From NCBI GenBank assembly GCA_002811645.1, contig PDIP01000028.1, positions 127,105 through 191,104 on the forward strand: 64,000 nucleotides of DNA. The letters run 5' to 3'. The notes under the pieces were generated by a model. It was given only the letters and a program-made list of their open reading frames with translations, had not been told where the DNA came from and did no database searches. The stretch is from Corallochytrium limacisporum Hawaii (lineage: Eukaryota; Protista; Pluriformea). Each line of letters opens with the position of its first letter. Within the stretch, counting starts at the first letter, position 1. Position numbers and translations under genes: made by a program. Positions 15,864 through 54,007 of the stretch are shown here, piece by piece.

Positions 15864-16395
15864 ACATGTGTAAGAATTTATGTGGTTAGTTTAATTAGAT
15901 ATTTGTTACTTTACGAATGATTCTTTAGGACGAATGCAAACAATGTTGACTACGAAAACAATTCAGAGAATGCTTTGCCGAATATGGGTTTGGCTGCGGT
16001 TGGTTCACGCCTGGTGAACGCTGCATCGTCGGCTGACGACTGCAGACAGGGGACCATCGCGGACTTTTCTGTGTTAGAGATGTGGAAGTGAACTATCGCA
16101 GAGCCCACTGATATGGAAGTAAATGGTTTGGTGTTGATGTTCAGCACGGGAACATGCAAAGATGGATTGGGGATACTAGGAAAGGCCGATTGCCGAGGTA
16201 ATTGATTTACGGTCAAAGGGCTGGTCAGAAAATACTAAACATTTTGAAGGGAGAACGAAGCAAATGAGCTGCCAAGATGGATTCGGCGGGGTTGGGATGA
16301 CGATCATCTGAAGATAGTGCAGGTCCTGCAGTCCAATCATAGGCTAGCTACAGAAGTTCTAGGTTCTGGCCTTCTGATGGAGTTCCTTGTCTTTC

Positions 16396-19300
16396 TCACT
16401 GTAGCTCGTTCAAGGGGGCAATCTGGTTGATGTAAACACCTACCATGCCATTGTTGAAGATAAGGTGCCACTCCCACGGCTTGAACACCGCCGGAGAGAC
16501 AGCAAAGGTATACTCCTGCGCGTTGGATGACACCAGCACCGACCAGGGTTCGTCGTCAGTGGAACCTTTCCAACGGCGAGGAAGCTCCAGAGTGAAGGTC
16601 TCAAAGCCGGAGACACCCAAACTTTCAGCGCTGGTGCCATCGGTGAAGAGCAGCGGTAGAATGCCGTAGGCGATCAGCCCCTTGCGGAAGTCCTCACCGA
16701 AAGACTGAGCAATGATGGCCCGCACACCGAGCTCCCGGCATGACTTGACCGCCCACTCACGGCAATTTCGCATGCCAAAGTCACGGCCACCAAGAATAAT
16801 TACATCGACATCTTCGCGGCGGTATCGGGCAGCCGCTTCGTGAATGGGCATGACTTCACCAGTTGGCAGATGCATAGTTTTGCCAGCTATGTTCTGGCTT
16901 TCGTTTGCAGCAGAATTAGTGGCATCGTTTCTACCACTGTAATGGCCACGGGGACTGCCGTAAGAGTCACTCTGACCCGTAGGCATGCTGTAGTAGCCGC
17001 TAGCATTTGCACCGGTCCATTGCTGACGCTGATTGGAGGAAATGTGCTGATGATGTTGCTCTTGCATAAGTAGCCGATTGCGAACAATGGCACTGGCAAA
17101 GGCAGCACGGATCATCACCTCGTGGTTCGCACGACGACTACCATAGGAGCCGTATTGTCGATTCTGTAGACCGAGCGACTTGAGGTATAAACCACTCGCA
17201 CTCTGTCGACGAATCATGCCTGCCGGAGAGATGGCGTCACAGGTCACACTGTCACCAGCAAAAAGCAGGCAACGTGCCCGCCGGAAAAGACGGTTGACCA
17301 TCAGTGCTTCGGAAGAGCTCCGGCCAGCCATGCCGTCAAAACCAAGTTGACGAACCGCGCCACGACTTGGACGCAATTCTGTGGATTCCGGATCCCAGGG
17401 ATACATTTCGAAGCGTGGGCACTGCAGAGAGTCCCATAGGCGGGTGCCTTCTGCGATGCGGCAGGACAGGTCCTCGACCAGCGAGGGCACTACCACGGCC
17501 GATTCCACCGCGCGAATCTCCTCACGAGACGGCCATAGGTCTGCCAGGAACACTGGCTCGCCGGTCTCCGCGTCAAAACCAAGTGGATCGGTGGCAAAAT
17601 TAATGTTTACGGTGCCAGCCAGAGCGTAGGCTACGACTAAAGGTGGTGATACGAGGTATGCTCCTCGAGTGGACGGATGTACGCGGCGTTCGAGCTTCCG
17701 GTTACCGGAGAGAATACTCACGGCCACGATGCTTTCCTTGGCGATCGTTTCATCGACTTCAGGCATTAGCGGAGCGGTCTCGCTGCGGCATACAGCGCAG
17801 CCAAAACCGGCATTGTGGAAGCCAAGTTGTTCCAAGTGGCGCAGAACTCCGGAATCTTCCAGGTACGACTGCACAGTACCGCCGCCAGGGGCAAGCTGTA
17901 GACGAATGTGCGGCAAGGGCTTGAGACCGCGCTGGAGGGCAGCTTTGGCAAGAAGACCAGCACCGAGCATGACGGTTGGATTGGACGCGTTGGTACACGC
18001 ACTGATGGCCGCAATCACGACACTACCGTGCCTCAAGTGCACGGGGCGCTCAATGTTCTTCTTGCCCGTCCAGAGAGTGAGTTTCTTCTTGCCATCCTCC
18101 AGAGTCTCCTGCTGAAATTCCTCAAGATATTGAGGTACCTGGCTGGCAGTCATGCAGCGACTGCGAAATTCCTCGGGCAAACAAACGACAGTGTCCAGGC
18201 GTTCGTCATCCACACCAAAACCAATCTGTGGATTTGGGTCCGTAAGTGCCTTTAGGAAGGTCTCCTGCATGTCTGTCACGGCAATACGATCCAGAGAGCG
18301 ACGGGGACCACTGCAAGTGGGCTGCACCTCAGTAAGGTCTACCATCTCCAGGCGGGTGTAACGATGACTCAGTTCGTCCGCGGTCTCAGTCTTCAGGTCC
18401 TTTTGGCTCCTGTACAGGCCCAGACACTTGAGTAGGTCCTTCACAATATCAACACTCTCCCACGGAGAGGACGCATCGGTAGCATCGTCCATCTGTGAAG
18501 TGGCCGAACTTCTAGATCCAGCGCAAGAGCCCACAATCTCGCTAAAGCTGGAATCGCCCTTGCTGTTCCCGAGCACAACCCAGTGGCGTTTCTTTGTGGC
18601 CAGGCGACTCTGTTGCAAATGCTGTGATGCAATGTCGTCGAATGGGAAGAAGGCGATCTGTGCGTCGTACTCTCCACACATGTGTGCCACAGTACATCGG
18701 TCAGCCACGCTCAGATTGCTCACACCAGGACCAACAAACTCAACAATAGCCCCATTCAAGGATTTGATCTTCAGACGCTTGGTTATGGCAAGTACAATGT
18801 CTGTGGAGGTCGCCAGTGGATCTACGTCGCCGTGCAGGTAGACGCCGACCACATCACGTATGGACAAAGGCAAAGACAGACCGAACATTGCCATTTCTGC
18901 GTCCAAAGATCCCACAGACCAAGCCAGCTCACCCAATCCGTTGATCAGACCGACGTGGCTGGCATTGCCGACCAGAATATCAGGGTACAGGAACGCATCT
19001 TTGGAGTTCCCGTTATTGCTGTTCCCGAAGGACCCACTCTTACGCAGACGGCTCGTTAGTACTCCAGCCAGGTCACTGGTACCGCCAACGCCCACCTCGC
19101 CGCTGCCTGTGCGGATAGAGCCGGCATTGCTCACTGACGTGCGATTCATTACAACCTGTGCCATGCGCTCCAAATTTACCTGGTGCACAATACCGCAGTC
19201 GGGAGGTGTGACGTTCACGTTTTCCATCTGCCGACTGGCCCACTTCAGCAGACGGTACATCTCCTTGCTCTGCTCAAAGTTTGCAAGCTGGGCACGGGTC

Positions 19301-20193
19301 ATAGCGGCCTGGAGGGTGGTTTTGTCCTGTAGCGGACGTGGAATGTCTTCGATCTGTCCAGTACTCCCCTTGACATTCCGATCACGACGGGAGGGGGACG
19401 AGTACATCCCACTGTCTTCATTGACGGATCCCATGTGACTTGAGTCTTCATAGTCGCCACCAAAGGAATAGTTTGAGGAGCGGTCACTGGCCCTGCTCCG
19501 TGTGCCAGTGGAACGGTGAGTCTGGGAGCCTCCAACACTGGAGCCTCCTCCGACACTGCTGGTTTCACTGCCTCCACCCATAACGCTACCTTTCTTGGTT
19601 GCACCACTGCCGCCGTCGAGGAGAATTTCTGTGGGGATCACCGGACGGATGGTACTGACATCGCCACCCTGCCTGCCCACTTCCTCCCGAATAACAGCGA
19701 TGTCCATGATGGCATTTACGGCTGCATAGTCCTGCATGACCACCTGTGAAGGAGGGATGGCCAGATCGATAGTGTGTCTTACGTCCTTGGCGGTGATCAC
19801 TCCTGAGGACGCGCTGCTTTCTCTTGCTGCACTTACGGCGGCGACGTGCTTTTCCCAATTGAGCAGGCGCTGGATGTCAGGATGATTTTTTACCTCTCCA
19901 ACTGATGGGGCATGGGTTGGATCCAGACCACCGCTGCTCATTGTCGCAAGCAATTCGTTAGCCACCCGGCGCACAGTAGCCTCTAGAATGATCTTGAGCA
20001 CATACGGATAGTTCTTGAGCTTGTCCGCGCCACCAACAATCGTCTCTAAGTCGATGTGATGGACCTCAATCTTCTGTCGCTTGACGATGGTGACTGATCC
20101 GCTCTTGGTCAATTTGTGTGTGCTCGACCTAGGAGTGGTAGCTTCCCTCGTAAGGGCTACTGTCCGCTCGAAGCTACCGCACAGCTTCGTCAT
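16396..20193 (-). CDS. Iron regulatory protein / cytosolic aconitase homolog, IRP2-like, predicted catalytically inactive
   Basis: HQVNLE, TSTDIVLAITK, VEFVGPGV, HGSVVIAAISACTNASNP, GFGCAVC, SGNR, SPPLVVAYALAG, YGSRR; active-site motifs altered; several low-complexity insertions. Confidence 0.9.
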   Translation of the reverse strand: MTKLCGSFERTVALTREATTPRSSTHKLTKSGSVTIVKRQKIEVHHIDLETIVGGADKLKNYPYVLKIILEATVRRVANELLATMSSGGLDPTHAPSVGEVKNHPDIQRLLNWEKHVAAVSAARESSASSGVITAKDVRHTIDLAIPPSQVVMQDYAAVNAIMDIAVIREEVGRQGGDVSTIRPVIPTEILLDGGSGATKKGSVMGGGSETSSVGGGSSVGGSQTHRSTGTRSRASDRSSNYSFGGDYEDSSHMGSVNEDSGMYSSPSRRDRNVKGSTGQIEDIPRPLQDKTTLQAAMTRAQLANFEQSKEMYRLLKWASRQMENVNVTPPDCGIVHQVNLERMAQVVMNRTSVSNAGSIRTGSGEVGVGGTSDLAGVLTSRLRKSGSFGNSNNGNSKDAFLYPDILVGNASHVGLINGLGELAWSVGSLDAEMAMFGLSLPLSIRDVVGVYLHGDVDPLATSTDIVLAITKRLKIKSLNGAIVEFVGPGVSNLSVADRCTVAHMCGEYDAQIAFFPFDDIASQHLQQSRLATKKRHWVVLGNSKGDSSFSEIVGSCAGSRSSATSQMDDATDASSPWESVDIVKDLLKCLGLYRSQKDLKTETADELSHRYTRLEMVDLTEVQPTCSGPRRSLDRIAVTDMQETFLKALTDPNPQIGFGVDDERLDTVVCLPEEFRSRCMTASQVPQYLEEFQQETLEDGKKKLTLWTGKKNIERPVHLRHGSVVIAAISACTNASNPTVMLGAGLLAKAALQRGLKPLPHIRLQLAPGGGTVQSYLEDSGVLRHLEQLGFHNAGFGCAVCRSETAPLMPEVDETIAKESIVAVSILSGNRKLERRVHPSTRGAYLVSPPLVVAYALAGTVNINFATDPLGFDAETGEPVFLADLWPSREEIRAVESAVVVPSLVEDLSCRIAEGTRLWDSLQCPRFEMYPWDPESTELRPSRGAVRQLGFDGMAGRSSSEALMVNRLFRRARCLLFAGDSVTCDAISPAGMIRRQSASGLYLKSLGLQNRQYGSYGSRRANHEVMIRAAFASAIVRNRLLMQEQHHQHISSNQRQQWTGANASGYYSMPTGQSDSYGSPRGHYSGRNDATNSAANESQNIAGKTMHLPTGEVMPIHEAAARYRREDVDVIILGGRDFGMRNCREWAVKSCRELGVRAIIAQSFGEDFRKGLIAYGILPLLFTDGTSAESLGVSGFETFTLELPRRWKGSTDDEPWSVLVSSNAQEYTFAVSPAVFKPWEWHLIFNNGMVGVYINQIAPLNELQ

Positions 20194-21012
20194 GGTCGAC
20201 TACTGATATTGAAACTAAACAACTACTTCGATTCTAACCCACTCTATGTCATGGTGAACGCCTGTAATCCCGTATCCTTTCTCTATGCAGCAACTTCCTT
20301 TTCATCGATAGTCCAAATTCTCAATTCTCCGATATTGCTACAAACAGTATGCGGTTTTGTCAGCAAACACTACTTCCTCGATCCTTATACCATTTCAGTA
20401 CCAAATGTCGAAGCGTGTGAAGTGGGACTCTCTGTTATGCCGGAAGAACTCTACAAAGCATTCTCCTACGTAATCCAAACCCATATACATTGGTACTGAC
20501 GCACATCCCGCCAAAGCCAAGTTCGATCGACGACCTCCACACTGGGTGGAATTCGCACGCGTCGTGTCCCGGGTGTCCACTCCCGTCGTGCCCAAGCACT
20601 CAATCGCCCTTCAGTGCACGGTATGCGCTTTGTCAAATTTGGAATGTGTTGGGCACTTTTTTGTGCCAGATCATCTCGCTCAGTTGAAGGAAAGTCCAAC
20701 ACCCGCTCCACCCCCTCCCCCAAAAAAAACTGTGGCTGACATTCTAGACCTCAAGGGTGGACACCAGAAAGCAAGTGGCCATTGCGTTTCGTCATCGAGG
20801 CAAAATAGTTTGCGGGCGCGGGCGAGGGTGCGATATAGCGAACGAGTACGAAGTGACTTTGTATGGGCCGCCGGAGGGGCCATGTGAGAGCTTGGAGCGG
20901 GCGCAAGGGTGTGTCTCGGCTCTTACCGGTCCCGGACACTACTAAACACAGGCTCACAACAGTACCACGGGGGTATTGGGGAACTCCCCCCCCCCCGGGG
21001 GGTTTTCTTCTC

Positions 21013-21387: not shown

Positions 21388-22172
21388 NNNNNNNNNNNNN
21401 NNNNNNNNNNNNNNNNNNNNNNNNNNNNNNNNNNNNNNNNNNNNNNNNNNNNNNNNNNNNNNNNNNNNNNNNNNNNNNNNNNNNNNNNNNNNNNNNNNNN
21501 NNNNNNNNNNNNNNNNNNNNNNNNNNNNNNNNNNNNNNNNNNNNNNNNNNNNNNNNNNNNNNNNNNNNNNNNNNNNNNNNNNNNNNNNNNNNNNNNNNNN
21601 NNNNNNNNNNNNNNNNNNNNNNNNNNNNNNNNNNNNNNNNNNNNNNNNNNNNNNNNNNNNNNNNNNNNNNNNNNNNNNNNNNNNNNNNNNNNNNNNNNNN
21701 NNNNNNNNNNNNNNNNNNNNNNNNNNNNNNNNNNNNNNNNNNNNNNNNNNNNNNNNNNNNNNNNNNNNNNNNNNNNNNNNNNNNNNNNNNNNNNNNNNNN
21801 NNNNNNNNNNNNNNNNNNNNNNNNNNNNNNNNNNNNNNNNNNNNNNNNNNNNNNNNNNNNNNNNNNNNNNNNNNNNNNNNNNNNNNNNNNNNNNNNNNNN
21901 NNNNNNNNNNNNNNNNNNNNNNNNNNNNNNNNNNNNNNNNNNNNNNNNNNNNNNNNNNNNNNNNNNNNNNNNNNNNNNNNNNNNNNNNNNNNNNNNNNNN
22001 NNNNNNNNNNNNNNNNNNNNNNNNNNNNNNNNNNNNNNNNNNNNNNNNNNNNNNNNNNNNNNNNNNNNNNNNNNNNNNNNNNNNNNNNNNNNNNNNNNNN
22101 NNNNNNNNNNNNNNNNNNNNNNNNNNNNNNNNNNNNNNNNNNNNNNNNNNNNNNNNNNNNNNNNNNNNNNNN
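21388..22172. other. Assembly gap (785 N)
   Basis: Run of N bases. Confidence 1.
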
Positions 22173-34500: not shown

Positions 34501-35666
34501 GTCACCCTGAACACTTGCACAATATCAGCAATCAGGGCCAGTAGATTGGAATGAAGGAAAGGTCTTGTAAGTCCTTTGTGGCCTCGTCGGCTTGCCTGGT
34601 CTCCTGAAGGACTCTCGCTGCCAGATCCGACGTCTCTCATGCCTGTAGCATTTCCTTCGGACAGATCCACAGACAGTTGACACAACTGATCTAGCAATTC
34701 TCTAAAGATATTGCCCAGTCGCTGAGAGGGACTAATATTTTGAGCTGCCATGAATCTCATTAGGTGGCGCATTGCTGCTATCACCGAGGCACGCACGTTC
34801 CAGTTGGGATCATTGAGACGAGATCGAATTGTCCATGTGCTCTCTGCTAGCTTGTCGTCAATTGAAGCGAAACTCCCTGTGCGGGTGGCTTCGACCACTG
34901 CAGATTCAATCTCCATTAGGGTCAATTTCCCGGTGACGTATACTGCTCGGGCTCTCACTGCTGGCCGTGGGTGATCAATAAGCTTTCCAATAACCGGCAA
35001 AATTTGTGATACGACTGCAGAGACATCGATTCGCATCGACCCAATCAATCCTAATAGCAGACGTGACTCAATCAGGTCATCCTGCTGCTTTGTGGGGCTA
35101 ATGACCGCGGGTTCTGATGTACCGTTCGATAGTGAACTGCTGGCCTGACTTCGCTGATCACTGGAAAATGCTATAGCTGAATAGTTCAGGTCTTGCAGTA
35201 TACTATTAATGACCAAATACTTTAGATCTTCCGGGCCCTGTGGTATCAAAAGCCCCGCCCCAAGGTAGCCTATCCGTCGTTCACGTAGACTGTACTGATT
35301 TCCGGTGAGTTTAATGCTAGGCACGAGCGCAACAGAAGGCACATCCGAAATAAGACCCATAACATGCAAACAGATCGCCTGCTTTAGTAATATTTCTTTC
35401 GCCGGCAAAGGTTCCTTCATGAGCCTCTGAATATGCTCGCGCGCTGCTGTGGTGGGCGATCCATTCGGTGACGCTGCAGATCTTTGTATACTCTCTAACA
35501 GTTCCCCAGGTTTTACGGACGCTCCATCGCCGCCACGCGCGGAAAGCTCTAACTGGGCGACAACTGTGTGCCACAGCCGTTGAGCAGCCAGTTTTTCACC
35601 GGCTGGGGTGGTCGTAAGCGCAATGGCTTTGAGCGGATCATCATACTCACTCTTATGTGTACTCAT
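31581..35666 (-). CDS. AP4E1: Adaptor complex large subunit, most like AP-4 epsilon
   Basis: Adaptin_N features LRERRIGYL...LVINSILQDL, NLRWKGL, VVDCLD...DPLINSAALEVLFRIANKDNAQAILKVML; long hinge containing KRNLARELF; C-terminal appendage-like region. Confidence 0.7.
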   Translation of the reverse strand: MSTHKSEYDDPLKAIALTTTPAGEKLAAQRLWHTVVAQLELSARGGDGASVKPGELLESIQRSAASPNGSPTTAAREHIQRLMKEPLPAKEILLKQAICLHVMGLISDVPSVALVPSIKLTGNQYSLRERRIGYLGAGLLIPQGPEDLKYLVINSILQDLNYSAIAFSSDQRSQASSSLSNGTSEPAVISPTKQQDDLIESRLLLGLIGSMRIDVSAVVSQILPVIGKLIDHPRPAVRARAVYVTGKLTLMEIESAVVEATRTGSFASIDDKLAESTWTIRSRLNDPNWNVRASVIAAMRHLMRFMAAQNISPSQRLGNIFRELLDQLCQLSVDLSEGNATGMRDVGSGSESPSGDQASRRGHKGLTRPFLHSNLLALIADIVQVFRVTDEDMSSEKLASTLMTSLRRIPKTSIMAYMIISEAVLLYSAAHQSLKEVEGLTGAVKEAIRSFLSSPSRNLRWKGLKLMNSVPLDIISSFRMEVVDCLDGEADEEADPLINSAALEVLFRIANKDNAQAILKVMLGTLERQMRDVSKNINGKRSPSTYTVADAEQTFNLCWKVAETYLTELQSLMQAVWELCEYCGGSLRHADWQTLECIGVQDADFQRVLKTIADLCVSAPPGLSDQFIIAIQEMIENQSGTNNKFRFLILVWYTCHAAKPQDKPVSLLTALLNKRSAPFSPFELIILLSAIYTVLQRTLQSEAGDDEGVKKLYQSCLGKINTVRPNQRQGLLVNLEVAFSVTGIQFTPLKSSIAVPPMVNSAHSAGAVDALTEEGLIDFLTRESELHRPSVANISPTDIRLEHHIPDNVSESSVSTQEALNTSQASDTNPPSNVTGVAHFFDEGGSLVESHLLNLQTSKQRLASQASTVEAHIDVSLAQSQPGRQAAAAHLPRNRSPLSSNVQSRDEDHMREQEKQKRQQQEVAERAERERQQLALEQQKLREKQERKRNLARELFAGLKEEEEEENQEPAKLDVSSSNSSSRQGSISRTRDAFDALQLSPKVASSGTEPVSLVPVKSKASVGLTMSAGEDTGLLGELSSMGGAMSPRRRGSGSSLLRSQSPGRLSGSSGGLDVHVPPSSMTGNEGSGVYSAVFSLDSSQSKPTQLSEFPSLSLVRIWREHDLVLKFSCAKDGRVKGRDPLKGKRLVLGLKASGVISGQPSMIIITKLERSPDEDNFDPTRESSAVAHLRPGTDQSSACFSIAWNERSNIEPSDDTDDILPRLTLEVTVLDPTDGTSTVTNVPCTLHFADFLRPMPQVFEHDFAQQWRILKGRESMILRKNWTLERLDHAFVRRPLFHRVFLQVAMHRSGYAAASVGNAAGRVYVRAQESDYDQNVIEIEIRASSQDFAGSVKRTLEDLCN

Positions 35667-50971: not shown

Positions 50972-53900
50972 ATGGAAGCTGCAGGAGCCATAACGGGTGT
51001 CGGCAACACCCAAAACGACCGCAAACATGCGTTTGAATGGCATACCTATGCTAAATGGTCCTACTGTGGGGTATGTTCGAAACTGATGTGGGGATTCCAC
51101 CGACAGGGCTTGAAATGTAAGGAATGTGGACTTGACGTTCACGACCACTGTGTAAGACTTGTGCCAAAGTGTCTTGGAGCAGATGTAGTGGCCAATATGG
51201 GAAACCTCAGAGACAGAAAGGCAGCTGCTATCCAAACTTTACGCAGCCAAGAGTTCCGGGACGTCGCGGTCACCATTGTGAGTGCAGCCAACTTGGCAAA
51301 GAAGCAAATGTTCCATACCCCTGACCCGTTCGCGGTGCTTGACGTGGATGGAAAGATCACTGAGACCCCTCCTTGCATACGTACGCACAGTCCGGTATGG
51401 AACTTTAAGCAGATAGTGGCCATCAAAGAGGATTCAACGATAATCATCCACATCTACGACAATAAGAAGAAGATTAACGGTGGCAAAGACGATGGCTTCT
51501 TAGGTATGGTGGCTGTGCCCTTCACTGCATTCTCACAGATGAGTCTCCAGTCTGGTGCGACGATTGCCTTTCGGTTGAAGAAACGGACAGCGAATGACAC
51601 GGTTACTGGTATGGTCGTGCTCAAGATGAAGTATACTGGTACCGCAAAGAAACAAGCCACTGGGTTGGAAAGGATTGTCAAGTCACAGATTATTACGACC
51701 GGGCGAAGGAACCGCCATGTGAGCATGTCTGGCCTGGGCGATAGTTTAAGCAAAGAAGACGAAGATCCACGAACTCCACGCGATGACATTAATGTGCACC
51801 ACCTAACCGTGGTGGACGAGAATGTCATAGATGAACACCTTGAAGCTGATGCCCTCGACATGGATGACCAAGAGTACGCAATTAGCCTGTCAAAACTGGG
51901 AACGAGTCCTGGTGCGCGTAGCTACATCAATCCAGATTTCGAAGTGAGGTTACGCGATATTGCTGCGGAACAAGACGTCAACCTGCCGGCAGGATGGAAA
52001 GAAGAGGTTGATGACACGGGCCGGACTTACTACGCCAATCCAAAGAACCGTGAAAGCTCTTACACGGTACCTACCACAGAGCTCAAGACAAGGACGTACA
52101 AGAGCCATAGGCCTGAAATTCTTGCTCAGGCGGCCAAGGCGGGGGAGGAGAAGCTTACACATGAACACATGCCTGACTCCGCGCTTCGAGGTCAACACTC
52201 GCGCCAGGGATCTCTGAGTTCGATAGATGCCAGAGAGCTTCAAGGACCGAGCCATTTGGTGCCAATGGTCCTTCCTGCACCGGAAGCAAAGACTCTCGAG
52301 GGCGACGGCATTGTTGTGCGCTGGTTGCACCCTCATTTCGTAGGAGAGGAGAATGGCAAAGCCAAGGATGTGGTGACTCCGCAGATGCAGAACCTCGAGT
52401 ACACTGTGTATGTTTGGCAGGAAAATGAATTGGAGTCGGATCTGGATATTGTCTACAAGGGACAGGACACAGAGCATCTCATCAAAGGGTTGGTACCGGA
52501 GCGTCCTTATCAGTTCGTAGTGAGCGTCAAGAACAACTACGGAGTGTCTGATCTGAGCCCCCCTTGCACACAAGTGGTGGCTCCGAAACGTAAATCACGC
52601 AAGGAGAAGGAAGCAGAGAAGCGGGCGGCCCAGGCAGAGCACGATAATCGTCCACATTGCCCGTTCATGATGGCTGGATTCTGCAGGTATGGCAATCGCT
52701 GCCGATACAGTCACGGGGCCGGCTTGCAGACTGAAGACGATGTGATGGTTGCGCTCATGGCGGCGTCCCTCAACGAGGATCCCAATGCGGGATATGCCGC
52801 TGCCATTGCAGCATCTCTGATGGATCAACAGAAACGCAAGGCACCCATCAATGCGGAACATATGAGCACGTTTCAACGTCATCTGCACAAGAAGGTGTCG
52901 CGATTCCGCAAGGACCTACCGAGGAAGAAGGGAGAGGTGCACATAACCATTGACCGGGAGAACGTCGTCGAGAGCTCGTTGAAGCAATTGACGGAGACAT
53001 CCACAAAAGAGCTGCGTAAGCGTCTGTTTATTCATTTCAGCAACGAGGGAGGCCTTGATTACGGTGGTTTGGCACGTGAGTGGTTGTACCTTCTCAGCCA
53101 AGAACTCTTTACACCGTTCTACGGGCTGTTTGAGTACAGCAAAAGCGACAACTATACGCTGGAGATCAATCCCAACTCAATTCTCAACAAGGACTGTGTG
53201 CCTTACTTCACCTTCATCGGCTGGATCCTAGGTATTTGCATTCTTCATGGTCAATTCATTGATGCGGCCTTTGTGAAGCCTTTGTACAAGCGTATGCTGG
53301 GCAAGCCCATCGAACTAGCAGACCTGCAGAACGTGGACCCTTCCTTCCACTCCTCCTTGTTGTGGATTCTGGACAACAGCATAGAGGGTGTGCTGGAGCT
53401 TACCTTCTCCGTAGATGCGGATCAGTTTGGTGAGGTAGATACTGTGGATCTTGTGCCGAACGGTCGGAGCATACCCGTGACTGATCAGAATAAGGCAGAG
53501 TTTGTCAGTCGTGTTGTGCAGTGGCGGGCCACCCGCAACACAGAGAAACAATTTGATGCTATGATGACTGGTCTAAAAAGATTCGTGCCACCGGATTCAC
53601 TAACGAGTTTTGATGAAAAAGAGTTGGAGATTCTCTTATGTGGCCTGCGGAAGTACGATCTGGACGACTGGAAGAAGCATACCGAGTATAAGGGCTTTGA
53701 GCCAGAGGATGCAATCGTCAAGTGGCTGTGGGAACTACTTGAGGAATTCGGACGCGACGAGCAAGGTAGATTCCTTCAGTTTGTGACCGGCACGTCTCGG
53801 GTACCCTTAGAGGGCTTCCAGGCACTCGCTGGCAGTGATGATCGCCAAAAGTTCTGTATCCAGAAGCTTGAAGGGGCCACGGACCGGTTACCGGGGAGCC

Positions 53901-54007
53901 ATACGTGCTTCAACCGTTTCGACTTGCCTGAATACGGCAGCAAGGAAGAGCTCAAGGAAAAGCTTGGCAAGGCAATGGATGGCTTTGAAGGCTTTGTGGA
54001 CGAATGA
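50972..54007 (+). CDS. NEDD4/Smurf-family HECT E3 ligase with C1-C2-WW-FN3-CCCH-UIM architecture
   Basis: C1 zinc finger, Smurf-like C2 (LAKKQMFHTPDPFA), WW (LPAGW...GRTYY), FN3, CCCH (CPFMMAGFCRYGNRCRYSH), HECT (EGGLDYGGLAREW...LPGSHTCFN). Confidence 0.92.
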   Translation: MEAAGAITGVGNTQNDRKHAFEWHTYAKWSYCGVCSKLMWGFHRQGLKCKECGLDVHDHCVRLVPKCLGADVVANMGNLRDRKAAAIQTLRSQEFRDVAVTIVSAANLAKKQMFHTPDPFAVLDVDGKITETPPCIRTHSPVWNFKQIVAIKEDSTIIIHIYDNKKKINGGKDDGFLGMVAVPFTAFSQMSLQSGATIAFRLKKRTANDTVTGMVVLKMKYTGTAKKQATGLERIVKSQIITTGRRNRHVSMSGLGDSLSKEDEDPRTPRDDINVHHLTVVDENVIDEHLEADALDMDDQEYAISLSKLGTSPGARSYINPDFEVRLRDIAAEQDVNLPAGWKEEVDDTGRTYYANPKNRESSYTVPTTELKTRTYKSHRPEILAQAAKAGEEKLTHEHMPDSALRGQHSRQGSLSSIDARELQGPSHLVPMVLPAPEAKTLEGDGIVVRWLHPHFVGEENGKAKDVVTPQMQNLEYTVYVWQENELESDLDIVYKGQDTEHLIKGLVPERPYQFVVSVKNNYGVSDLSPPCTQVVAPKRKSRKEKEAEKRAAQAEHDNRPHCPFMMAGFCRYGNRCRYSHGAGLQTEDDVMVALMAASLNEDPNAGYAAAIAASLMDQQKRKAPINAEHMSTFQRHLHKKVSRFRKDLPRKKGEVHITIDRENVVESSLKQLTETSTKELRKRLFIHFSNEGGLDYGGLAREWLYLLSQELFTPFYGLFEYSKSDNYTLEINPNSILNKDCVPYFTFIGWILGICILHGQFIDAAFVKPLYKRMLGKPIELADLQNVDPSFHSSLLWILDNSIEGVLELTFSVDADQFGEVDTVDLVPNGRSIPVTDQNKAEFVSRVVQWRATRNTEKQFDAMMTGLKRFVPPDSLTSFDEKELEILLCGLRKYDLDDWKKHTEYKGFEPEDAIVKWLWELLEEFGRDEQGRFLQFVTGTSRVPLEGFQALAGSDDRQKFCIQKLEGATDRLPGSHTCFNRFDLPEYGSKEELKEKLGKAMDGFEGFVDE

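What the first reader, a model, noticed from the sequence alone, without database searches (positions are those of the whole stretch)
16396..20193. IRP2-like pseudo-aconitase: catalytic residues lost, Fe-S ligands kept
Seen in sequence, using human IRP1 numbering from memory: DHS becomes DGG (catalytic His126 lost), TDSHT becomes NASHV (Asp205 lost), TTDHISP becomes TCDAISP (His679 lost), and GAGSSRDW becomes GMRNCREW (catalytic base Ser778 to Asn, codon 16765-16767). All three [4Fe-4S] ligand Cys (SACTN, GCAVC) and Arg536/541/713/780 remain, and the 1265-codon ORF is intact. Established: vertebrate IRP2 is aconitase-dead and has Asn at the Ser778-equivalent site. TSTDIVL and CSGP are animal-IRP-like spellings. 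Inference: a dedicated iron/Fe-S-sensing regulator, possibly RNA-binding, in a unicellular organism. This would mean an IRP2-type post-transcriptional iron system older than animals, or a convergent one.
Basis: partly seen in the sequence, partly recalled or inferred. Interest (0 to 1): 0.85.

Follow-up and report, generated by a model that had tools for sequence, protein, structure and literature searches.

The report
Enzyme-dead iron regulator outside animals
A single-celled relative of animals has turned its only copy of the iron-regulatory-protein/aconitase gene into an apparently enzyme-dead protein that keeps its RNA-gripping and iron-sulfur residues, and its mitochondrial aconitase gene carries a matching iron-responsive-element-like hairpin, which suggests that this animal way of controlling iron use may be older than animals.

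Summary
The genome is Corallochytrium limacisporum. The intact 1265-codon ORF is the only IRP1/AcnA-type gene found in it. It has lost His126, Asp205, Asn298, His679, Ser778 and Ser779, and keeps the three cluster cysteines and all eleven listed IRE-contact positions (9 match animal IRP1, 2 conservative). It appears transcribed, and 14 of 14 coding differences in a second strain are synonymous, so it is not decaying. (1) IRP homologues of Sphaeroforma, Creolimax and Capsaspora show the same split: catalytic residues drift, RNA contacts and cysteines stay. (2) The 5' leader of mitochondrial aconitase, a classic animal IRE target, carries a CAGUGU hairpin with a bulged C. The scan had noted it separately (s1-564589); I verified it (chance about 1e-3 or less). 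It has a 6-bp rather than 5-bp upper stem, and ferritin has none. 'IRP2-like' holds for function only: no CPFH insert, no Arg536Lys, no FBXL5, and Asn778 is not general in IRP2. Best reading (0.55): an Fe-S-gated translational repressor. RNA binding, cluster and loss of activity are all untested; the tree cannot separate shared origin from convergence.

The parts
16396..20193 (-). Intronless ORF, 1265 aa, IRP1/AcnA-type pseudo-aconitase; the only gene of this type found in the genome
   Evidence: AlphaFold model pTM 0.79, best experimental fold match IRP1 2B3X
15867..20323 (-). Probable transcript span, unspliced: about 130-nt leader and 460-530-nt trailer
   Evidence: contigs of two runs guessed to be RNA start and end near the gene limits; 20324-21000 is uncovered
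19612..19617 (-). Asp193-Gly194: IRP1 Asp125 kept, catalytic His126 replaced
19300..19614 (-). Ser/Gly-rich disordered insert (aa 194-298), at the same surface loop as the IRP2 insert but with no Cys and no CPFH motif
18961..18963 (-). Ala411 in place of Asp205
18769..18771 (-). Lys475 in place of Arg269 (contact to IRE loop U17); conservative
18682..18684 (-). His504 in place of Asn298
18286..18312 (-). Ser628 and Arg636 = Ser371 and Lys/Arg379 (contacts to IRE loop A15, G16), kept
17989..17997 (-). Cys733-Thr-Asn = Cys437 (cluster ligand), Thr438, Asn439 (RNA contacts), kept
17788..17799 (-). Cys799 and Cys802 = cluster ligands Cys503 and Cys506, kept; the residues that follow are changed
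17683..17700 (-). Arg832 and Arg837 = Arg536 and Arg541 (substrate and RNA binding), kept
17224..17238 (-). Asp986 kept (Asp678), Ala987 in place of His679, Ser989-Pro990 kept (Ser681, Pro682; pocket for the bulged C)
17131..17133 (-). Arg1021 = Arg713 (stacks on the bulged C), kept
16753..16767 (-). Asn1143-Cys-Arg-Glu-Trp: catalytic Ser778 and Ser779 lost; Arg780 and Trp782 kept; Asp781 to Glu
20244..20305 (-). Two upstream ORFs (18 and 2 codons) in the probable leader; function not tested
   Evidence: leader extent

Best explanation
A dedicated, enzyme-dead iron regulatory protein that works like the RNA-binding half of animal IRP1. When cytosolic iron-sulfur assembly is adequate it holds a cluster on Cys733/799/802 and stays closed. 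When iron or clusters are short it opens, grips the CAGUGU loop and bulged C of a hairpin in the 5' leader of mitochondrial aconitase mRNA (perhaps a few others) and holds back translation of that iron-costly enzyme. Shown here: fold, lost catalytic residues, kept cysteines and RNA contacts, purifying selection, single copy, the hairpin and its rarity. Inferred: no catalysis, cluster binding, RNA binding, the hairpin lying in the mRNA, repression and iron dependence.
For: Residue map. Over three unicellular lineages, RNA-contact plus substrate/RNA arginine positions are identical in 34/39 against 154/270 for other near-invariant polar positions (p=2e-4); catalysis-only positions 18/39, no better than background. 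With cluster-adjacent contacts left out: 17/21 identical, 21/21 with conservative changes (p=0.04 and 4e-4); for this protein alone 7/7 against 53/92, p=0.04. Arg269, Ser371, Lys379 and Ser681 are needed for IRE binding, not for catalysis (PMC4693282). 14/14 synonymous strain differences. Hairpin at L001:3074-3101(-), loop 81 nt before the start codon: 4-bp lower stem, bulged C, 6 Watson-Crick pairs, CAGUGU plus one A; relaxed IRE class 1.35 per Mb in simulated background, none as good in 20 Mb; the only sense-leader hit in 400 kb of held sequence. Mitochondrial aconitase is a known IRE target (PMC3048577); 6 of 53 animal-clade aconitase leaders fetched have such hairpins, two with the same extra A.
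Against: The upper stem has 6 pairs, not 5, so the bulged C is out of register; Rfam IRE models do not report it and my geometry was relaxed after seeing it. It does not fold better than shuffles (z -1.4). No IRE at ferritin, SDHB, ALAS or four Nramp genes; no second strong copy in the genome. Most RNA-contact residues are also invariant in bacterial AcnA, so they may be structural. The three lineages may share one history, so the pooled p-values overstate independence. IRP2 keeps the same cysteines without a cluster (PMC3048577), and the stretch after Cys506 is altered here.
Confidence: 0.55

Rival explanations
1. Non-RNA sensor or scaffold: the holo-protein senses Fe-S or citrate (held by the four kept arginines) and acts through proteins, for example in the nucleus as Drosophila holo-IRP1A does. 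The hairpin is chance or a relic.
For: All cysteines and four substrate arginines are kept; five disordered inserts could bind partners; nuclear holo-IRP1A acts without RNA binding (PMC6884552); only one candidate target RNA.
Against: Does not explain Ser371, Arg379, Ser681 and Lys/Arg269, nor a rare hairpin in exactly the aconitase leader; Sphaeroforma and Creolimax have Arg541Glu and two new arginines in the substrate pocket.
Confidence: 0.2
2. True IRP2-style control: a cluster-free RNA binder whose amount or cysteine redox state, not a cluster switch, follows iron.
For: IRP2 keeps the three cysteines without a cluster; IGNSG after Cys506 is lost; only one CIA2-family gene was found; two uORFs in the leader.
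Against: No FBXL5-like gene: two hemerythrins, neither with an F-box; no CPFH motif; cysteines kept in all four unicellular proteins despite 30-39% loss of other invariant positions.
Confidence: 0.12
3. Still an enzyme, with a changed substrate or chemistry (an Fe-S hydro-lyase using other residues such as Cys1144 or His504).
For: Fold, cysteines, Gln86, His178, Ser206, His207, Glu302, Asp678 and arginines are kept; strong purifying selection.
Against: The acid (His126) and base (Ser778) are both gone; Ser642Ala is the classic inactive aconitase (PDB 1C96 title; own knowledge); all six other aconitase-family proteins of this genome keep DSH and Ser at this site; the relatives lose different catalytic residues, not one new set.
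Confidence: 0.1
4. A decaying leftover of cytosolic aconitase with no current job.
For: Very long branch; only 65% of near-invariant positions kept.
Against: 3.8 kb open frame; 14/14 synonymous differences, P about 2e-9 under neutrality; apparent transcript in two strains; matching relatives.
Confidence: 0.03

Closest known systems
Metazoan IRP1 (ACO1, cytosolic aconitase / IRE-binding protein 1)
   Same: Four-domain fold, about 40% identity in aligned parts, cluster cysteines, all listed IRE contacts; groups with animal IRPs in the free trees (SH-aLRT 97-99).
   Different: Catalytic His126, Asp205, His679, Ser778, Ser779 and Asn298 lost; five long inserts; candidate RNA has a 6-bp upper stem; ferritin has no IRE here.
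Vertebrate IRP2 (IREB2)
   Same: Aconitase-dead IRP; insert at the same loop; Asn at the Ser778 site as in human IRP2; cysteines kept.
   Different: No CPFH/Cys-Pro insert, Arg536 kept, many more active-site losses, no FBXL5, and no active IRP1 paralogue found beside it; IRP2 nests within vertebrates.
Degenerate IRPs of Sphaeroforma arctica (SARC_01936), Creolimax (CFRG5972T1) and Capsaspora owczarzaki (XP_004349259.2)
   Same: Same split: His126, His679 and Ser779 lost in all; cysteines, Arg536, Arg713, Arg780, Ser681, Pro682, Trp782, Thr438, Asn439 kept. Databases name them ordinary aconitase or IRP1; I found no paper on their degeneration.
   Different: Only 31-35% identical; different further losses (Ser778 kept in the two ichthyosporeans). 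The Capsaspora N-terminal model looks doubtful. Whether these genomes hold an intact second copy or an IRE was not testable.
Bacterial RNA-binding aconitases (B. subtilis CitB, E. coli AcnA) and protist IRP-like aconitases
   Same: AcnA family; RNA binding by the apo-form (own knowledge; IRE-like bacterial RNAs noted in PMC3048577).
   Different: Those are active enzymes; this protein is not, by sequence.

Membership tests
AcnA/IRP subfamily of aconitases | Aconitase plus C-terminal swivel domain, closer to IRP1/AcnA than to mitochondrial aconitase | tested here: met
Active aconitase | Three cluster cysteines (437, 503, 506) | tested here: met
   Cys733, Cys799, Cys802
Active aconitase | Catalytic His126, Ser778 and supporting Asp205, His679, Ser779, Asn298 | tested here: not met
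Active aconitase | Citrate/isocitrate turnover | not testable with these tools
   needs purified protein
IRP1 (IRE-binding) | IRE contacts Arg269, Ser371, Lys/Arg379, Thr438, Asn439, Ser681, Pro682, Arg713, Arg780, Asp781, Trp782 | tested here: met
   9 match animal IRP1, Arg269Lys and Asp781Glu conservative
IRP1 (IRE-binding) | Orthology to animal IRP1 | tested here: inconclusive
   free trees 97-99 SH-aLRT with animals; a place outside the sampled eukaryotes is not rejected, p-AU 0.48; no fungal, plant, amoebozoan or choanoflagellate rows
IRP1 (IRE-binding) | Reversible cluster switch between enzyme and RNA binder | not testable with these tools
   the enzyme half is lost by sequence
IRP2 (IREB2) | Cys/Pro-rich 73-aa insert with CPFH | tested here: not met
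   insert at the same site has no Cys
IRP2 (IREB2) | Lys at the Arg536 site | tested here: not met
   Arg832
IRP2 (IREB2) | FBXL5 (hemerythrin plus F-box) in the genome | tested here: not met
   two hemerythrin genes, no F-box in either; draft genome, so absence is not proven
IRP2 (IREB2) | Branches with vertebrate IRP2 | tested here: inconclusive
   not in any free tree; held together lnL 15 lower, p-AU 0.061; with one IRP2 row p-AU 0.68; all four unicellular proteins plus IRP2 p-AU 0.105
Iron-responsive element (aconitase leader hairpin) | CAGUGH loop | tested here: met
   CAGUGU, followed by one extra A
Iron-responsive element (aconitase leader hairpin) | Unpaired C and lower stem | tested here: met
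   bulged C, 4-bp lower stem, -8.6 kcal/mol
Iron-responsive element (aconitase leader hairpin) | Five-pair upper stem between C and loop; Rfam RF00037 or RF02253 match | tested here: not met
   six pairs; no Rfam match
Iron-responsive element (aconitase leader hairpin) | Lies within the mRNA 5' UTR of an iron-using gene and binds an IRP | not tested

The most novel reading that the evidence does not exclude
The IRE/IRP system is older than animals: the holozoan ancestor already had an IRP that bound a CAGUG hairpin, with mitochondrial aconitase rather than ferritin as an early target, and unicellular holozoans (Corallochytrium, ichthyosporeans, Capsaspora) kept only the regulatory half, once or several times, long before vertebrate IRP2 did the same.
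Probability: 0.4. Interest if true: 0.9.

Novelty: new variant of a known kind. Interest (0 to 1): 0.8.

Why it matters
A review states that IRE-containing mRNAs are found only in metazoans and that the ferritin IRE is the probable prototype (PMC3048577); a sponge study places the origin in early animals (PMC7034838). An enzyme-dead IRP under purifying selection plus an IRE-like hairpin at a classic target in a unicellular holozoan would move that origin back, change the order in which targets were acquired, and show that the moonlighting enzyme was resolved into a pure regulator more than once. The question is directly testable: one protein, one 28-nt RNA, in an organism grown in axenic culture (PMC5560861). 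Five literature searches pairing IRP/IRE terms with unicellular holozoans or IRP2 evolution found nothing on this, though most subscription papers are not in the library.

Tried and rejected
Second intact ACO1/AcnA in this genome: none found by Pfam or protein search. Canonical IREs: Rfam IRE_I best hit 19.6 bits inside a coding region, opposite strand; IRE_II none; strict and relaxed scans of ferritin, Aco2-like, Lys4, SDHB, ALAS, four Nramp loci and the gene's own UTRs negative. A hairpin just before the ferritin start is no better than shuffles (z -1.4). No shared k-mer among iron-gene leaders. FTR1 not found. A region search for more unicellular pseudo-IRPs returned only Creolimax; no choanoflagellate protein was retrieved. 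The Capsaspora locus is not on record. The careful (bootstrap) tree did not finish, so supports are SH-aLRT from quick trees. P0532 was a clustering artefact. Three wanted papers were not held and one PMC id was a wrong guess.
Full report
Source. The genome has 24.11 Mb in 286 contigs and long intronless ORFs. Its mitochondrial aconitase is recorded in EukProt as Clim_evm13s62, and size and intron poverty match Corallochytrium limacisporum (PMC5560861). This is a unicellular holozoan, a relative of animals. Neighbouring genes (tyrosine phosphatase, ceramidase, HLTF-like helicase, thioesterase and others) have no link to iron, as expected in a eukaryote.

Observation. The ORF at 16396-20193 (-) is open for 1265 codons and belongs to the AcnA/IRP branch of aconitases. 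The predicted structure has a confident core (pTM 0.79) with five disordered inserts, and its best experimental match is human IRP1. Asn298, Ser779 and the IGNSG stretch after Cys506 are also changed. The cysteines and four arginines are kept. The loss of His126 is the least certain, because an insert opens at that point and one alignment fills the column with an insert His; the residue next to Asp193 is Gly. That loss of His126 and Ser778 abolishes catalysis follows from established aconitase chemistry (own knowledge; Ser642Ala structures). It was not measured.

Single copy and alive. The genome holds mitochondrial aconitase, an Aco2-like gene, a homoaconitase-like gene and three further family members, all with DSH and the catalytic Ser, but no other IRP/AcnA gene was found. 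Contigs from two runs guessed to be RNA cover 15867-20323 without joints and stop at the gene limits. One run is another strain: its 14 coding differences are all synonymous third positions, P about 2e-9 under neutrality by simple site counts. The gene is therefore under purifying selection although the enzyme residues are gone.

What is kept. The IRE contacts of IRP1 listed in PMC4184891 and PMC3048577 are all present, with two conservative changes. The protein keeps only 65% of positions that are near-invariant in active enzymes, and only 51% of the polar ones. A search of 1.8 billion representatives, named, and a profile search turned up degenerate IRPs in Sphaeroforma arctica, Creolimax and Capsaspora. 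Across Corallochytrium, Sphaeroforma and Capsaspora, catalysis-only positions survive 18 of 39 times, like background (154/270); RNA-contact and dual arginine positions 34 of 39 (p=2e-4); cysteines 9 of 9. Leaving out contacts next to the cluster gives 17/21 identical and 21/21 allowing conservative changes. Caveats: most of these residues are also invariant in bacterial AcnA, and the lineages may not be independent.

A candidate RNA. Rfam models and a strict 5-bp scan found no IRE. At G000:C62, L001:3074-3101(-), 65-92 nt before the start codon, lies a hairpin with a 4-bp lower stem, a bulged C, six Watson-Crick pairs and a CAGUGU loop with one extra A. A relaxed IRE class that includes it occurs 1.35 times per Mb in simulated background, and nothing as good occurred in 20 Mb; it is the only sense-leader hit in 400 kb of held sequence. 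Over the roughly 3 kb of UTR where an IRE would be expected, chance is about 4e-3 for the relaxed class and below 2e-4 for this quality; the class was widened after seeing the hit. As a control, 6 of 53 aconitase transcripts of the sister clade (one identified as cnidarian; the rest presumed animal) have IRE-type hairpins, two with the same extra A. Against it: the stem is one pair too long for the usual spacing, ferritin has no IRE, and no second strong copy exists in the genome. Residues around the C pocket are changed here (Asn685Met, Gly777Arg, Ser778Asn, Ser779Cys, Asp781Glu); that they fit the longer stem is speculation.

Not IRP2. Human IRP2 has Asn at the Ser778 site, but bat IRP2 has Ser and differs from IRP1 only by Arg536Lys among 21 active-site positions, so the shared Asn carries no signal of kinship. 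The first insert sits at the loop where IRP2 has its insert, but lacks cysteines and the CPFH motif, which IRP2 shares with long isoforms of invertebrate IRP1. Neither hemerythrin gene has an F-box. In trees, IRP2 nests in vertebrates (99), and the four unicellular proteins join each other (96, with a long-branch warning) inside a clade with animals (99). Alone, the query falls with animals (97) at an unresolved place. AU tests do not reject a union with IRP2 (p 0.68, 0.061, 0.105) or a place outside the sampled eukaryotes (p 0.48). Sphaeroforma and Capsaspora share several non-conservative changes (Asn707Ala, Ser779Pro, Arg802Asp, Ser806Arg), which hints at one old pseudo-enzyme lineage, but convergence after loss of catalysis is not excluded. 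Because animal IRP1 is active, either an ancestral duplication or repeated loss is required; which one is open.

Mechanism and verdict. Most likely (0.55) the protein is the regulatory half of IRP1 on its own: cluster-bound and closed when iron is plentiful, open and bound to the aconitase leader when it is scarce. Rivals are a non-RNA Fe-S or citrate sensor like nuclear holo-IRP1A of Drosophila (PMC6884552; 0.2), cluster-free IRP2-style control (0.12), a changed enzyme (0.1) and decay (0.03). It works like an IRP, belongs to the AcnA/IRP family, fails the tests for an active aconitase and for IRP2, and its RNA fails one defining feature of a canonical IRE. I rate it a new variant of a known kind, interest 0.8, because IREs are held to be animal-only (PMC3048577) and the claim can be settled with one protein and one short RNA.

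Noticed in passing
L001:3074-3101 (-) = G000:C62, about 34626-34653: IRE-like hairpin in the leader of mitochondrial aconitase; central to this report but outside the window.
   Followed up: yes
P0282, P0289, P0296, P0304, P0310, P0342, P0354, P0287, P0294 and others: Long isoforms of invertebrate, amphioxus and lamprey IRP1 (cnidarians included) carry an insert ending in CP(F/Y)H at the site of the IRP2 '73-aa' insert, so that insert looks older than vertebrates.
   Followed up: partly
P0128/P0280 (Tigriopus), P0126, P0158, P0160 (Gordionus), P0129: Further IRP-like proteins without Ser778, several with the CPFH insert and intact RNA contacts: possible independent IRP2-like duplicates in copepods and a horsehair worm. 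P0126, P0158 group with Tigriopus by sequence; P0129 is unassigned.
   Followed up: partly
P0125, P0274-P0279: Bat IRP2 has Ser, not Asn, at the Ser778 site.
   Followed up: yes
L038, L046, L067, L074, L077, L085 (5' leaders): IRE-type hairpins in mitochondrial aconitase leaders of unnamed, probably invertebrate, metatranscriptome contigs.
   Followed up: partly
L007 (G000:C11), L003, L005: An isopropylmalate/isocitrate dehydrogenase domain fused to an aconitase-family protein (1044 aa), with two unfused relatives; possibly a leucine-pathway fusion.
   Followed up: no
L018 (G000:C74): SLAC1-type channel fused to a hemerythrin domain; noted before by the scan (s1-562666).
   Followed up: partly
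L024-L027 and G000:C76: Five Nramp genes and no FTR1 match; one animal-type ferritin; one CIA2-family gene.
   Followed up: partly
window 50972-54007 (+): HECT ligase with C1, C2, WW, FN3-like and CCCH zinc-finger matches, an unusual Nedd4-like architecture.
   Followed up: no
window 21388-22172: 785-base run of N about 1.2 kb upstream of the gene; does not touch the ORF or its probable leader.
   Followed up: no
G000:C84:51458-51490 (+), C154:45909-45941 (+), C247:48353-48385 (-): Three weak matches to the hairpin model (E 0.15-1.1); context not read.
   Followed up: no
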